Assembly: GCA_964252035.1 (NCBI GenBank)
Contig: OZ176200.1
From: Podarcis erhardii
Lineage: Eukaryota
DNA length: 64,000 nt
Reading direction: 5' to 3' (one strand)
Part shown: positions 8,759 through 18,189 of the stretch, piece after piece
Numbering within the stretch: the first letter of the stretch is position 1
How the letters are laid out: every line of letters begins with the position of its first letter
Made by a program: the position numbers and the translations under genes
Notes under the pieces: generated by a model
Told to the model about the DNA's origin: nothing
What the model saw: the letters and a program-made list of their open reading frames with translations, nothing else
Database searches by the model: none

Positions 8759-9839
8759 TATAAGCCTCTTCCAAAATATCAATTCAATCCCAGGAAGGAG
8801 TCATTTAACTTCTCTGATTCCTGTAATGTGATTCGGCCCTCAGATCCACCTCTGTTATCATCATGATTTTCTGCCACATAAGTATTTGTAATTTCTGGTT
8901 GAGAGCTTCCGATCATGCAGTTTATTCTTTCTGAATGCTCATCTCTGTTGAGCAAATTATTATGTTAATCACCATCTTTGACTTTCCAAGATAGCACCCA
9001 GCCCAGCTTGTGGAACATGTAAATATCGCAGCCTTGCTTTTCTTTTAAATGCGAGAGGAGGTTTGCCCCACAGAATCATGGAAACCACAAAGGCATAATC
9101 AATGTCATAAAAAAGGTACACATTAACATCCAGCTATGTAATTACCTTACAATTTAGAGGCCCTCATATACATGAAGATAATATGGCTCTGTAATGTGGC
9201 TGAAATGATATTTCTGAAAACAGATGCTTTCTCCAGCCATCTGTGATAAGTCTGTTTGTGCTCTAGCCTTACTCCTTGCCTGCAAGCCAAAATAAATAAA
9301 ACAACAACCTAAAAACGCCTCATGAATGGCACTGGTGAAATAACTTCCATTCATTAATGTTCATATCACGTAATTTTCCTTTTCTCTAGGCATACAGCAC
9401 AGTTCCCTGTATTACACAAGATTTCTCTAGTTAAAGCTGCCCTGGTCATTATTTAACCCCAGTGAAATTAATCAAGGTTAAACTAAAACTGACCCTAGAC
9501 CAGTGGTGTTTGTTGGTGTCCCTTTTCCCTTATAAAAGAAGATGGAGCCACTGTTCCAGATGCTATTAGACCTCAAATAGGCAAGAATTTTATTGTCTGT
9601 GGAATGAATCAAGCGAGAACTCATTTGTCTAAATGTCCAGGGAACATCCAAAACATTGTGATGATAAAAAAGTTTGCTTAAATGCATAGGTTGGCTAACC
9701 TGGATGGAGTAACAGGACAGCTTCTTGCTTGGCTCCAACAGCTCCAGCCAGCATGACCAATGGGTAGCAACATCTGGAAAGCTCAGGTTCCCCATCCCTG
9801 ACTTAGATGGACTCTTGTAATTTGAACGGAATTGTTTTT

Positions 9840-10507
9840 TTTTTTTTTTTTAATTTTTTTTATTGAATTTCATTTGACACACACATACAAAGACAAAAAA
9901 CAAAAAAGAAAAACAAGCAAACAAAGAAAAAACCACAGAACAAAAAAAAACTAATACATTAAACATCTTACTTCCATCCCTGCCGATTTCGGATTTCTTC
10001 TTTTAATGACTGAATTTTAACAGCTGGTGTTAATATGTGGTTTATACCTCGAGAGTTTTATAGCTGACCTGCTATAGTTGGTAAGTTTCGTAAATTTCCT
10101 TCAATATAGACCATAAATTTATTCCAATCGTCCTTTAACTTTGCATTTTTTTGGTTTCTGATTCTTTGGGTCATTCTTGCCAATTCAATAAAATCATATA
10201 ATTTTGTTTGCCACTCCTTCACCGTTGGTATGTTTGTATTTTTCCAATTTTGAGCGACTAATATTCTGGCTGCTGCTGTTGAGTATTGAAATAGAGTTTT
10301 GTCTTCCTTCCTAATTTCCTCTCCGATAATACCTAGTAAAAAGGCTTCTGGTTTTTTTGGGAATGTGTATCTGAATATTTTCTTTAGCTCATTATATATC
10401 TGATTCCAGAATTTTTTCATTTCCCCACATCCCCACCACATATGTATAAAATTACCTTCTTTTATGTATAAGACCGGTAATAAGGCCTGTTGGAAATGTA
10501 AAATAAA
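9840..10507 (-). mobile_element. L1-clade LINE, 5'-truncated, with 5' inversion
   Basis: ORF2 C-terminus (KEGNFIHMWWGC..KKPEAFLLG..AARILVAQNWK..), 3' UTR, poly(A) tail; 17-bp TSD TGAACGGAATTGTTTTT at 9823-9839 and 10508-10524; 10464-10507 is inverted. Confidence 0.93.
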
Positions 10508-10854
10508 TGAACGGAATTGTTTTTGAGACCTTGTGACTTGCATAATAGTGTCTTTTGCCCAACCAAAAGTATTATTTTGCCCAACCAAAAGTGTTATTCA
10601 TGCAATTAGTAATTTCATGATGTTATCCCCCCCCCAAGTAAATACCTGCTGTGGGGATCAGGTGATCCCTGGGAGGTGAGTTGATACAGTCCCTAACAGG
10701 AGTTTACCTCTTGATGCAAATAGAAATCCTGGGGCTCCCAATCTGGAATCACAGGGAGGCCAAATGGTTAAACACCCATTTTCCAATATTGTGGGCTGAC
10801 TACAGATCAGGACATGGTTTGTGGCTACTATTATTTACCTAAAAAGAAGGATTA

Positions 10855-11446
10855 CCATATTTTTCTGTGTATTGGGCGCTCCCATGTATAGGATGACCCC
10901 TATTTTTGGGGACTCCAAATTAAGAAAATGGAGGGAGATTGACCTGAATTGTTGATGAAAATCGCTCACCCGCCGGACTAATGTTGACAGCCACACACCT
11001 CTAATAAGCTGCTTATCAGCTGTTCCCTCGCAGGCAGAATCAGAAAATCACTGAGCTTTTTGTGGGAGAGGCTCAGGAGGGGGACAAGGTGCAAGGTTTC
11101 TATGACAGGAAAGACGCAGAGAGGTGGTATTACTTTGATCGCCATGGCCAACTGGAGCTGCAGCAACGCTCACACGTAGCTGATCACAGACTCTGTGCGG
11201 CACAAATGGACCACCTTCAGCCTCCCTTCCAACTGTAGGGCGGGCTGAGTGGGAGGAGCCAAGCAGACTACGGAGGCCCCGTGGCTCGCCACTGCGAGGA
11301 GCTGCAACTGCCAGAGCATGTATGGCGGCAAGTAACATATTTATTTATATATTTAATTGATATATTCCATGTATAAGATGACCCACATTTTTAAACTTGA
11401 AAAAATTGGGGGGGGGGGACCTTGTCTTATACATGGAAAAGTACAG
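10855..11446. mobile_element. pogo/Tigger-type non-autonomous DNA transposon
   Basis: TA-flanked imperfect TIRs CCATATTTTTCTGTGTATT / GTCTTATACATGGAAAAGTACAG, internal GTATA(A/G)GATGACCC repeats. Confidence 0.7.
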
Positions 11447-14800: not shown

Positions 14801-15616
14801 ATTTCTCTCAATTTCTATCAACAGACAGATCCATCCATCCCTATCAACACTGCTATCATTTCACCACCAAGTTAAGACACATTTGTTTGCTTAGGCATTT
14901 TAATTGTCTATAGTGTCTTTATGTGGAGGCTGTTTTTAGCTGCAGCTTGTTTTTAGCTGCCTCTCTTTGGATTTTTAATGAATTTGTTGTTTGTTCCATT
15001 GATTTGGTTATCACTTGTTTTATGTTGTTGTAACCCCCCCCCCCACCGTCAACACCTATGAAGGGCGGGCAATAAATTATTTCTTAAAAAGAATAATAAA
15101 TTGTGCAGATCAGCCGATTGTGCTTCTATGGCAACTCTCCAGACAAAGAAATAAAATGGAAGTATTCTGGTTACCAGTTCCTCTTGTTAACCTTGCTTGT
15201 GTGGAGTATAATAAGGATCAAAGGGGTGATAGGTAATGAGGGAAGACATTTATTTTTATATTCCAAAGCCCCTTTATTTTTCTATTTTGTGCTCTTTCTC
15301 GCATCTGTTATTTGAAGTGAGGACAATGAAAGATGAAAAGTCAAAAACAGGGAAAACCGCTGAGGTCAAGAAGGAGATTGGCTGTAGCCACCCAAACTTG
15401 CAAAACAGCATCAAGCACTTATTTTTTCTGGTCCATCAAGTTGTCTTGGAGGAGCTGTTGAGGCTTTCTCTTCAAGCTTCTTTTCCATTTCTTCTTTCAT
15501 GGCAAGAACGCAACTACTGCCCAAAATTTGTTTGATGGCCAGAAGTGCTGCTGTGTCTCTGACTTCCTTCCCTTAATTATACAGCAAAGAAATTGCTCTA
15601 AAATGAACTCAGATCA

Positions 15617-16184
15617 CAGTCATGACATTATGTTTGCTGACTGGGAACAGTTATGGACCACTGGTGTTAAGTTTACGGCATGTAATGCCTTAAAAGAAAA
15701 TATAATGAAAATGATCTACAGGTGGTACATGACCCCAGTCAAGCTTGCAAAAATTTACCATTTGCCCAATAATAAATGTTGGAAATGTAATGAGAATGAA
15801 GGTACCTTTTATCACCTATGGTGGACCTGCCCGAGGGTGAAAGCATTCTGGGAAATGATCTATAATGAAATTAAGAAAGTCCTTAAATGGACATTTACTA
15901 AGAAACCAGAGGCTTTTCTCCTGGGCATGGTTGGCCAATTGGTGCCAAAGAAGGATAGGACTTTCTTTATGTATGCTACTACTGCAGCAAGAATTCTTCT
16001 GGCAAAGTATTGGAAGATGCAAGAACTACCTACTCTTGAAGAATGGCAGACAAAGGTGATTGACTTCATGGGACTGGCAGAGATGACCAGCAGAATTCGT
16101 GACCAGGGGAAAGAGGCAGTGGAAGAAGACTGGAAGAAATTTAAAATATATCTTAAAAACTGTTGTAAAATTGAGGAGTGTTAA
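15617..16184 (+). pseudogene. L1 ORF2 C-terminal fragment with CCHC zinc knuckle
   Basis: No stops to 16184; CWKC-x8-HLWWTC motif; KKPEAFLLG and AARILLAKYWK shared with the 9840-10507 element. The listed ORF start at 15528 lies in flanking DNA. Confidence 0.9.
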
Positions 16185-16472
16185 GATGTCAAGGGGTAAG
16201 AAGCAGAGAACTGCAGCTGTAAATAACAAATTTGTGGGAATTTAATGAAGGGAACTAAATGGATAAATTGACTAAAGGGTTGCTAAAAAAATTTAAAATA
16301 AGGATGCAGCGAAAGGGAGGTAAGGGGAAGTCGATTGAAAGAAGTTACAAGAAAATAAGATTATGAATTTATTTATGTTTGATTTGTTTATGTTTGTTTG
16401 TATTTTGTGATGTGTTTGTTTTTTAATTATGTGTTTCAAAAATTGAATAAAAATTATTATAAAATAAATAAA
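15617..16472 (+). mobile_element. L1-clade LINE, 5'-truncated, young
   Basis: Perfect 18-bp TSD TAAAATGAACTCAGATCA (15599-15616, 16473-16490); intact ORF2 C-terminus; T/G-rich 3' UTR; AATAAA and (AAAT)n tail. Confidence 0.95.
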
Positions 16473-18189
16473 TAAAATGAACTCAGATCAGATCAAAATA
16501 ACAGCTGGGGAGGATAGACACAGAAGAAAACACTTGATCTTCTCTCAGTGTTGCAAATGCAGATAGTGTCCTCCTAGTGATTCTGAAAATGAACGCAGTA
16601 AAGACTCTCAACAGGCTGGCCACTTTTAAGAATTCCATTAAATGGGAATTATTCTTCCATTGGATCTCACATTATACAAAGCACCGTGCCACTGTTTAAT
16701 CAAACTCAATGCATGGTGTGTGTGTGGGGGGGAATCTCTTTCCTTAGTCTCTTTTCCATGACTTCAGAGATGCCCATACCGTTTTAATTACAGGTTGAAA
16801 GAGATTGCCTGGATAAAGATCAAAATCTTCACACCAAATATTAGCAGTAAACTTGATTGATTGAGTACGAAGGTCCTCCAGACCCATGAAGAGTGAAGGT
16901 GCTATTGACAGAGGTGCATTATAAGCATTCTAAAGTTTGTGTTGGCATGCATTTGTAAGAGTTGGCTTTCCCAGTGTAGAATTAGCTGGTTTATAGAACT
17001 TCAGCTCCTTCCTCTCCCAAATTGGGGTCATGGTAATCTTGGCTGGATGATGTTCAAAAATGGATTGTTCTTAGGTCACAGTTTACTCCAAGATAGCTAT
17101 GTTTTGGTCTGCTGTAGAAATGAAAGCAAAGGGGGAAAACCTATTTTCTAAAACACTGTTGGATATGTTCTTCACATGACGGCCCTATACGATTGCCAAC
17201 AATGTAAAATAAGTTCAACTGAAAAGCATTTTGTTTGGGGAAATATGAAGATACATGGAAGTTCTGTCAATGGTGAGGGAGGAGAAATTTGGTTCAATTC
17301 CTGTTTTGATGTGAACCTACCTATCTAATTTGCACTTCTAGAAGCAACTTGCCAACCAAAAGCACAGCTAACCTTTCAAATTCATACTTCTCTTAATTTT
17401 GTGATCCAGCTCCTCAACTCCCCAAAATGTGTGTATTAGGAGAAAGTTGGCATGAAAATGCTTAGTGAACAAAACATTAAAATGGACTGTGTGAAGGAAA
17501 ACTGCTTGCAAAAATATGCATGATAGGCAAAATGTTGTTTTTTAAAAAATGTGTGTACTAAGAGAAATGAACTTACACAAATGTGCAGTAAAATAGTGAT
17601 GAATTTTCGACAGCAGTTTTTTTAATGCGAATTCATATGAAAATATTGCAAATTTAATTCAAGATTAGAAGAACAGGCAACAAGAGAACCCAAAAGTAAC
17701 AGATGCATTCAATCTTATGCTGGTGCATCTGTGATGGCCAGGCTCAAGCATATATTGATATTGCCATCAACCAGTGAGGAACATATTTGCAGCTCTCTCC
17801 AATAGCTTGAAAAGTGGAGGGGATGGGAACCTCTAGGGCCAGGACTTACATTGACCTCTTATCTAACAGATGGCAGAGGTTCTCTGTCCAACAACCCTCT
17901 GAAACTCATATTTCACTCATCCGCTATTTCTACCTTTGGTGCTCTGGTCCCTGGCAATAATATTATAGGAACAAACATTATGCTCCTCTGGTGTAATTCA
18001 TCCAGCTCTACAAGAAGCATGTGAATAAGATCAGGCAGCTGCCCCACAAGTAGTTGAATAAGGTCAGGCAGGTTAAATTTTCTCAGCTCTAACTCTCAAC
18101 TGGGAAGTACTGGTGTTCCATGCTGGAAGGTAATGCTGCTGAAGCAAAAAGATAGACTTTTCATTACTACCTGTAAAATTAATCATAAA

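What the first reader, a model, noticed from the sequence alone, without database searches (positions are those of the whole stretch)
9823..10524. Twin-priming 5' inversion in a squamate L1 insertion
Seen: inside a 17-bp TSD, the minus strand encodes (I)KEGNFIHMWWGC.., while 10464-10507 on the PLUS strand encodes MYKTGNKACWKCKIK, the immediately upstream half of the same zinc knuckle (compare [26 protein letters not shown] in the 15617 element). The two pieces overlap by ATAAA and meet at a 2-nt AT microhomology. The TSD end (TGAACGG) partly matches the RNA continuation (AGAAGGT). Established: this geometry is the twin-priming signature described for mammalian L1. To my recollection it is little documented in non-mammalian L1; that is unverified.
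Basis: partly seen in the sequence, partly recalled or inferred. Interest (0 to 1): 0.7.

Follow-up and report, generated by a model that had tools for sequence, protein, structure and literature searches.

The report
Lizard L1 insertion with flipped tip
A young, dead 668-base tail fragment of an L1 jumping gene in a lizard genome carries its first 44 bases back to front inside one 17-base target duplication; this is the "twin priming" pattern well known from human L1, so it is a clean but ordinary example in a less-studied host.

Summary
A perfect 17-bp target-site duplication (9823-9839 and 10508-10524) encloses an L1 3' fragment on the minus strand. It has an A12 tail, an AATAAA signal, a 206-nt 3' UTR and 135 intact ORF2 C-terminal codons. 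Next to the far duplication, 44 bp (10464-10507) lie on the plus strand.

Contigs of other copies of the same L1 family show that these 44 bp are the sequence directly upstream of the body's 5' end. Five bases (ATAAA) are present in both pieces, and AT is shared at the joint.

In three related species, whose flanks are 1.1-1.5% diverged, contigs leave the window at 9734 and resume exactly at 10508. Only about 150 letters lie between, against 773 in the window. So the body and the inverted tip are absent together, and came in as one event. I did not see the letters of the empty site, and about 60 of them are unaccounted for.

Twin priming is the best explanation (about 0.85). Microhomology at the internal priming site is weak: 4 of 7, with the terminal base mismatched.

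No held paper describes this in lizard L1. First-reader notes of this scan list other 5'-inverted L1 copies in the same genome. I class it as a new member of a known kind, of modest interest.

The parts
9823..9839 (.). Target-site duplication, copy next to the poly-A tail (TGAACGGAATTGTTTTT on +)
   Evidence: Identical 17/17 to 10508-10524. One of only two such repeats in the window.
9840..9851 (-). Poly-A tail (A12; up to A17 if the five T of the TSD are counted)
   Evidence: Read directly.
9852..10057 (-). L1 3' UTR, with the AATAAA signal at 9859-9864
   Evidence: A contig at about 8.5 times unique depth matches 9868-10083 with no substitutions, so near-identical sister copies exist (table 8, record 8).
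10058..10465 (-). Direct (non-inverted) L1 piece: the last 135 codons of ORF2 plus the stop at 10058-10060, starting inside the CCHC zinc knuckle (IKEGNFIHMWWGC...)
   Evidence: It matches the human LINE-1 ORF2p C-terminal domain, residues 1138-1252, E 5.7e-6. It is 52% identical to the window's other L1 tail and 53-60% to P0001-P0004.
10464..10465 (.). Inversion joint: AT fits both pieces (2-nt microhomology)
   Evidence: Loose ends of other copies begin 'behind 10465' and 'before 10464' (table 7).
10464..10507 (+). Inverted 5' piece, 44 nt, coding MYKTGNKACWKCKI(K), the upstream half of the zinc knuckle. Its last five bases (ATAAA, 10503-10507) repeat the first five of the direct piece (10465 down to 10461).
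   Evidence: The 30-nt continuation of other family copies aligns 26/30 to it and is followed by ATAAAAGAAGG. Related species' contigs do not contain it, because their alignment starts at 10508 (table 8).
10508..10524 (.). Target-site duplication, copy next to the inverted piece. The first-strand nick site TTTTT/G lies at 10524|10525.
   Evidence: This is the exact point where contigs of three related species resume.

Best explanation
This is one L1 retrotransposition event that was primed from both cut DNA ends (twin priming). The L1 endonuclease nicked the window's plus strand at TTTTT/G (10524|10525 in the empty site). The T-run annealed to the poly-A tail and primed the first cDNA, which ran 626 nt back into ORF2. 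The other strand was cut 17 nt away. Its freed 3' end (...CCGTTCA-3' in L1 orientation) sat down inside the same L1 RNA at ...AUAAA|AGAAGG and primed a second, short cDNA of 44 nt. After RNA removal the two cDNAs were joined at a 2-nt AT microhomology and the gaps were filled. The first cDNA had run 5 nt past the second priming site, which left ATAAA on both sides. The result is a dead-on-arrival insertion. Shown: the anatomy, the contiguity of the two pieces in the family, and the absence of both pieces in related species. Inferred: the order of events, the use of a single RNA molecule, and the enzymes involved.
For: A perfect 17-bp TSD encloses both pieces. The poly-A tail, AATAAA signal and TTTTT/G nick site are L1-type. 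The body is an L1 ORF2 C-terminal domain. Other family copies in four sequencing runs continue past 10465 with the reverse complement of the inverted piece, matching 26/30 and 24/28. Copies that match the inverted piece continue upstream with WYITPEKLSK, which parallels [11 protein letters not shown] in the window's other L1. A contig in X18 joins 10441 to 10501 on opposite strands, as an uninterrupted family copy should when laid on this locus (table 5). Collapsing the 5-nt overlap gives CWKC-KIK-EGNF, the same spacing as [11 protein letters not shown] and CWKC-REV-EGDL in P0001. Single contigs of two related species (X1, 1629 bp; X18, 1149 bp), plus two overlapping contigs of a third (X4), cover 9000-9734 and resume exactly at 10508 with about 150 letters between, against 773 here (table 8). 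Small duplications at the joint and TSDs of 10-20 bp are typical of human 5' inversions (PMC5668948; PMC4245944).
Against: Strict microhomology between the priming DNA end and the RNA is 0 nt. The 4/7 match has a mismatched terminal base and a chance probability of about 0.07. In human and chimpanzee only 4.6% of 5'-inverted L1 lack such microhomology (PMC2912911). I also recall, without checking, that 44 nt is short for the inverted piece of a human L1. The inversion joint is seen only in the assembly; the output does not show a read-derived contig crossing 10464/10465 at this locus. The related species have about 60 more letters between 9734 and the TSD than the 88 expected, and I could not read them.
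Confidence: 0.85

Rival explanations
1. Twin priming in trans: the second DNA end primed on a different RNA molecule of the same L1 family, not on the molecule being copied from its poly-A tail.
For: Notes of this scan report head-to-head L1/7SK and L1/U6 chimeras in the same genome (I did not check them). If they hold, priming on a second RNA does happen in this genome.
Against: The two pieces abut to within 5 nt on an element several kb long. That would be an unlikely coincidence for two separate molecules.
Confidence: 0.05
2. The inversion is not part of the insertion event. It is either a later 44-bp inversion at the element's 5' edge or an assembly error.
For: No read-level view of the joint at this locus was obtained (one search shows only other copies' loose ends there).
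Against: A later inversion would have to break exactly at the TSD boundary and exactly at the truncation point. It would not create the 5-nt ATAAA duplication. The geometry matches a known one-step product.
Confidence: 0.05
3. Snap-back (hairpin) self-priming of the first cDNA, or two independent insertions.
For: An 11/12 near-repeat GGAAATG(A/T)AAAA lies 50 nt apart in the element.
Against: A snap-back would copy the adjacent body and give a palindrome. Here the inverted piece is the upstream sequence, not the reverse complement of its neighbour. A separate 44-bp insertion would need its own tail and TSD. Both pieces share one TSD and are absent together in related species.
Confidence: 0.02

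Closest known systems
[quoted passage not shown]
   Same: One TSD of 10-20 bp. A poly-A tail on the non-inverted 3' piece. The inverted piece is the sequence directly upstream. There is a small duplication and a short microhomology at the inversion joint, and an L1-type nick site.
   Different: The host is a lizard and the L1 family is only distantly related to human L1 (E 5.7e-6 over the ORF2 C-terminal domain). The inverted piece is only 44 nt. There is no strict microhomology at the internal priming site.
Twin-priming chimeras of L1 with snRNAs in mammals (Doucet et al. 2015, PMC4476161)
   Same: A short inverted piece lies head to head with a 5'-truncated L1 inside one TSD.
   Different: There the inverted piece comes from another RNA. 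Here it is the same L1 RNA, contiguous with the body. For the lizard Anolis that paper reports only template-switch U6 chimeras.
De novo LINE inserts in chicken DT40 and human HeLa cells (Yamaguchi et al. 2014, PMC4245944)
   Same: 5' inversions go with TSDs of about 15 bp. This insertion has 17 bp.
   Different: That study saw no 5' inversion of human L1 in the one sauropsid cell line tested. This is a native L1 in a lizard germ line.

Membership tests
L1-clade LINE | ORF2 C-terminal cysteine-rich (CCHC) domain homologous to L1 ORF2p | tested here: met
   phmmer hit to human LINE-1 ORF2p residues 1138-1252, E 5.7e-6, with the H and C of the knuckle aligned. No Pfam family reached its threshold.
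L1-clade LINE | Poly-A tail, long TSD and a TTTT/A-like nick site | tested here: met
   A12 tail, 17-bp TSD and TTTTT/G nick site.
Twin-priming 5' inversion | Two pieces of one element on opposite strands inside a single TSD, with the poly-A on the non-inverted piece | tested here: met
Twin-priming 5' inversion | The inverted piece is the element sequence directly upstream of the non-inverted piece, give or take a small deletion or duplication | tested here: met
   Loose ends of other family copies show it, with a 5-nt duplication.
Twin-priming 5' inversion | Microhomology at the inversion joint | tested here: met
   2 nt (AT at 10464-10465). This is short and weak as evidence on its own.
Twin-priming 5' inversion | Microhomology between the second DNA end and the RNA at the internal priming site | tested here: inconclusive
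   0 nt by the strict criterion. The 4/7 match has a terminal mismatch and a chance probability of about 0.07.
Twin-priming 5' inversion | Single event: the empty site lacks both pieces and holds one TSD copy | tested here: inconclusive
   Both pieces are absent in three related species and the alignment resumes exactly at the TSD. The empty-site letters were not seen, and about 60 letters are unaccounted for.
Twin-priming 5' inversion | Second cDNA actually primed from the second-strand nick | not testable with these tools
   This needs a retrotransposition assay or an in vitro reaction.

The most novel reading that the evidence does not exclude
Native L1 families of lacertid lizards produce 5' inversions as a regular outcome. 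If so, the absence of inversions seen with human L1 in chicken DT40 cells is not a general sauropsid host property. This copy would also show that the second priming can start from a DNA end with a mismatched terminal base and stop after only 44 nt. The insertion may also still be segregating: a contig of the same-species run ends exactly at the TSD end.
Probability: 0.4. Interest if true: 0.4.

Novelty: new member of a known kind. Interest (0 to 1): 0.3.

Why it matters
Twin priming has been characterised almost entirely in human, ape and mouse L1. A cell-culture study proposed that 5' inversions depend on both the host and the LINE species (PMC4245944). A well-resolved natural case in a lizard shows that the pathway operates with a native, distantly related L1 in a sauropsid germ line. 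It comes with family contiguity, a 17-bp TSD and absence in sister species. On its own it is one data point. Its value would come from a genome-wide count of such copies compared with the 18-31% reported for human L1.

Tried and rejected
- **Same-family copies in the window:** blastn of the element against the window found none. The only other L1 tail, at 15617, belongs to a different family.
- **Word-based protein search:** the ORF2 tail found only 53-60% relatives of fragment length.
- **Pfam:** no significant family.
- **Fetching the related species' empty-site contig:** two exact look-ups of flank ORFs and a word search with the 105-aa flank ORF found nothing on record. The empty site therefore rests on the coordinates.
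- **Original paper:** the twin-priming paper (PMC311219) is not held.
- **Literature searches:** two multi-term searches were too broad to be useful.
- **Large representative-protein search:** not run, because the protein's identity was not in doubt.
- **Snap-back origin:** rejected.
- **Microhomology at the priming site:** checked and found not significant.

Full report
**What is in the sequence**

The plus strand holds TGAACGGAATTGTTTTT at 9823-9839 and again at 10508-10524, identical in 17 of 17 bases. The base before each copy differs (T against A), so the repeat is exactly 17 bp. The whole 64-kb window has only two perfect 17-mer direct repeats spaced 200-1500 bp apart. Both flank L1 tails: this one, and the pair at about 15599/16473 around the element at 15617.

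Between the two copies, read on the minus strand from 10465 down, lies an L1 3' fragment:
- 135 uninterrupted codons (IKEGNFIHMWWGCGEMKKFWNQIYNELKK...AGQL);
- a stop at 10058-10060;
- a 206-nt 3' UTR with AATAAA at 9859-9864;
- an A12 tail at 9840-9851 that abuts the TSD.

The coding part matches the C-terminal domain of human LINE-1 ORF2p, residues 1138-1252, with E 5.7e-6. The histidine and last cysteine of the CCHC knuckle are aligned. Pfam gave nothing significant.

The remaining 44 bp, 10464-10507, read MYKTGNKACWKCKI(K) on the plus strand.

**Are the two pieces contiguous in the family?**

The window has no second copy of this family, so I used public sequencing runs.

One search found one species (organism H) that holds 75-81% of the sampled words. 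It is probably the source of the assembly. Several related species hold 14-27%.

laid the contigs of H and of three relatives on 9000-11300 at 85% likeness or more. Contigs from other copies of the L1 family pile up on 9850-10507 and leave the window at the inversion joint.
- 'Behind 10465' they continue, on the plus strand, with TTTGCATTTCCAACAGGCCTTATCTCCAGT (organism A, four contigs, agreement 0.96). Shorter or variant versions appear in H and in organism I.
- Reverse-complemented, that continuation is ACTGGAGATAAGGCCTGTTGGAAATGCAAA followed by ATAAAAGAAGG. It aligns without gaps to positions 10-39 of the 44-nt inverted piece at 26 of 30.
- The last five bases of the inverted piece (ATAAA) are therefore the same family positions as the first five of the direct piece.
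- Contigs that match the inverted piece leave it 'before 10464' with a sequence that reads WYITPEKLSK in frame with MYKTGNK. This parallels [19 protein letters not shown] in the window's other L1.
- One contig of organism I joins 10441 to 10501 on opposite strands. An ordinary uninterrupted copy should look like that when laid on this locus (table 5).

At protein level, collapsing the 5-nt overlap gives CWKC-KIK-EGNFIHMWWGC. The spacing is the same as [18 protein letters not shown] and as CWKC-REV-EGDLYHMWWSC in P0001.

The test that would have refuted the reading came out in its favour.

**Was it one insertion event?**

In organisms A and I a single contig (1629 and 1149 bp) matches 9000-9734 with 8-11 differences and then 10508-10664. 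Between the two matches the contigs hold 150 and 148 letters, where the window has 773. In organism C two overlapping contigs give the same figure (table 8).

The 668-bp insertion cannot fit into 150 letters. In all three species the match resumes at the first base of the TSD and not at 10464. The 44-bp inverted piece is therefore absent together with the body.

This part of the check is incomplete. For a clean empty site I expected 88 letters (9735-9822) before the TSD, not about 150. I could not read the contigs themselves. Pieces shorter than about 100 letters are not listed in that table. The related species also differ from H by about 70 extra letters at 10664/10667. An unrelated indel near 9734, inside a high-copy repeat (about 100 times the unique depth at roughly 9735-9790), is the simplest reading, but it is an inference. 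Attempts to fetch the contigs through flank ORFs failed.

**Mechanism**

In L1 orientation the locus reads: flank, AAAAACAATTCCGTTCA, antisense 44 nt, sense 626 nt ending in poly-A, AAAAACAATTCCGTTCA, flank.

This is the product expected when both ends of the staggered cut prime reverse transcription on one RNA:
1. The T-run at the TTTTT/G nick primes on the poly-A tail.
2. The other end (...CCGTTCA-3') primes internally at AUAAA|AGAAGG.
3. The two cDNAs are joined at AT.

The 5-nt duplication means that the first cDNA ran five bases past the second priming site. Small duplications or deletions at the joint are described as usual for human 5' inversions (PMC5668948). TSDs of 10-20 bp are also typical of them (PMC4245944; PMC2912911).

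One feature does not fit well. By the strict criterion there is no microhomology between the priming end and the RNA. In human and chimpanzee only 4.6% of inverted L1 lack such microhomology.

**Rival explanations**

- A snap-back origin is excluded. The inverted piece is the upstream sequence, not the reverse complement of its neighbour.
- Priming on a second RNA molecule is unlikely, because the pieces abut to within 5 nt.
- A later inversion would not create the ATAAA duplication.
- An assembly error would have to mimic a known one-step product exactly. No read-level view of the joint at this locus was obtained, and I flag that as a limitation.

**Age**

The TSDs are perfect and the 135 codons are intact. 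A contig at about 8.5 times unique depth matches the 3' UTR without substitutions. The insertion is absent from species whose flanks differ by 1.1-1.5%. All of this points to a recent insertion from a recently active family.

In the same-species run, the left-flank contig ends exactly at the last base of the TSD. The right-flank contig carries 12 unmatched letters before 10508. This hints at a second, empty allele in that sample, but I could not test it.

**Comparison with what is known**

Twin priming is textbook for human L1. It accounts for 31% of human- and chimpanzee-specific insertions (PMC2912911) and 18% of polymorphic ones (PMC5668948).

In the held library no paper describes it for lizard L1:
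- The Anolis population study cites the twin-priming paper only for truncation.
- The snRNA-chimera study reports only template-switch chimeras for Anolis.
- Yamaguchi et al. found 5' inversions only with human L1 in human cells, apart from one zebrafish Nimb-2_DR insert in DT40. They found none with human L1 in chicken DT40, and proposed that inversions depend on host and LINE species.

The library lacks most subscription journals, so a blank there is weak evidence.

Notes of this scan call the genome lacertid. They list further first-reader reports of 5'-inverted L1 copies and followed-up L1/7SK and L1/U6 head-to-head chimeras on other pieces of the same genome. I did not check these and treat them only as leads that the pathway is common here.

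**Verdict**

This is a new member of a known kind, useful as a clean non-mammalian example and as a seed for a genome-wide census. It is not surprising to a specialist.

Noticed in passing
window 15599-16490: A second L1 3' fragment lies on the plus strand at 15617-16472, 52% identical in protein to the first. It has a 17-18-bp TSD (about 15599-15616 and 16473-16490) and an A-rich, impure tail. It is a plain 5' truncation without inversion.
   Followed up: partly
window about 9735-9790 and 10880-10960: These short stretches have contig depth 100 to 1000 times the unique level in all four runs, so they are pieces of very high-copy repeats flanking the insertion. One contig joins 9755 to 10897. 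The repeat family was not identified.
   Followed up: no
window 9734/9735 and 10664/10667: Three related species share about 60 and about 70 extra letters at these two points relative to the window. These are indels that separate the window's species from the other three. Their content was not seen.
   Followed up: no
window 9839 and 10496-10508: In the same-species run the left-flank contig ends exactly at the TSD end. The right-flank contig has 12 unmatched letters before 10508. This may be the trace of an empty allele, meaning a heterozygous insertion.
   Followed up: no
window 10058-10588 (minus strand): A 176-aa ORF runs from the unique right flank through the antisense of the inverted piece into the ORF2 tail. 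It appears to be an accidental product of the insertion geometry. No relatives were sought.
   Followed up: no
window 10413-10424 and 10491-10502: An 11/12 near-repeat GGAAATG(A/T)AAAA occurs twice in the L1 sense sequence about 50 nt apart, on either side of the breakpoint. It probably has no meaning.
   Followed up: partly
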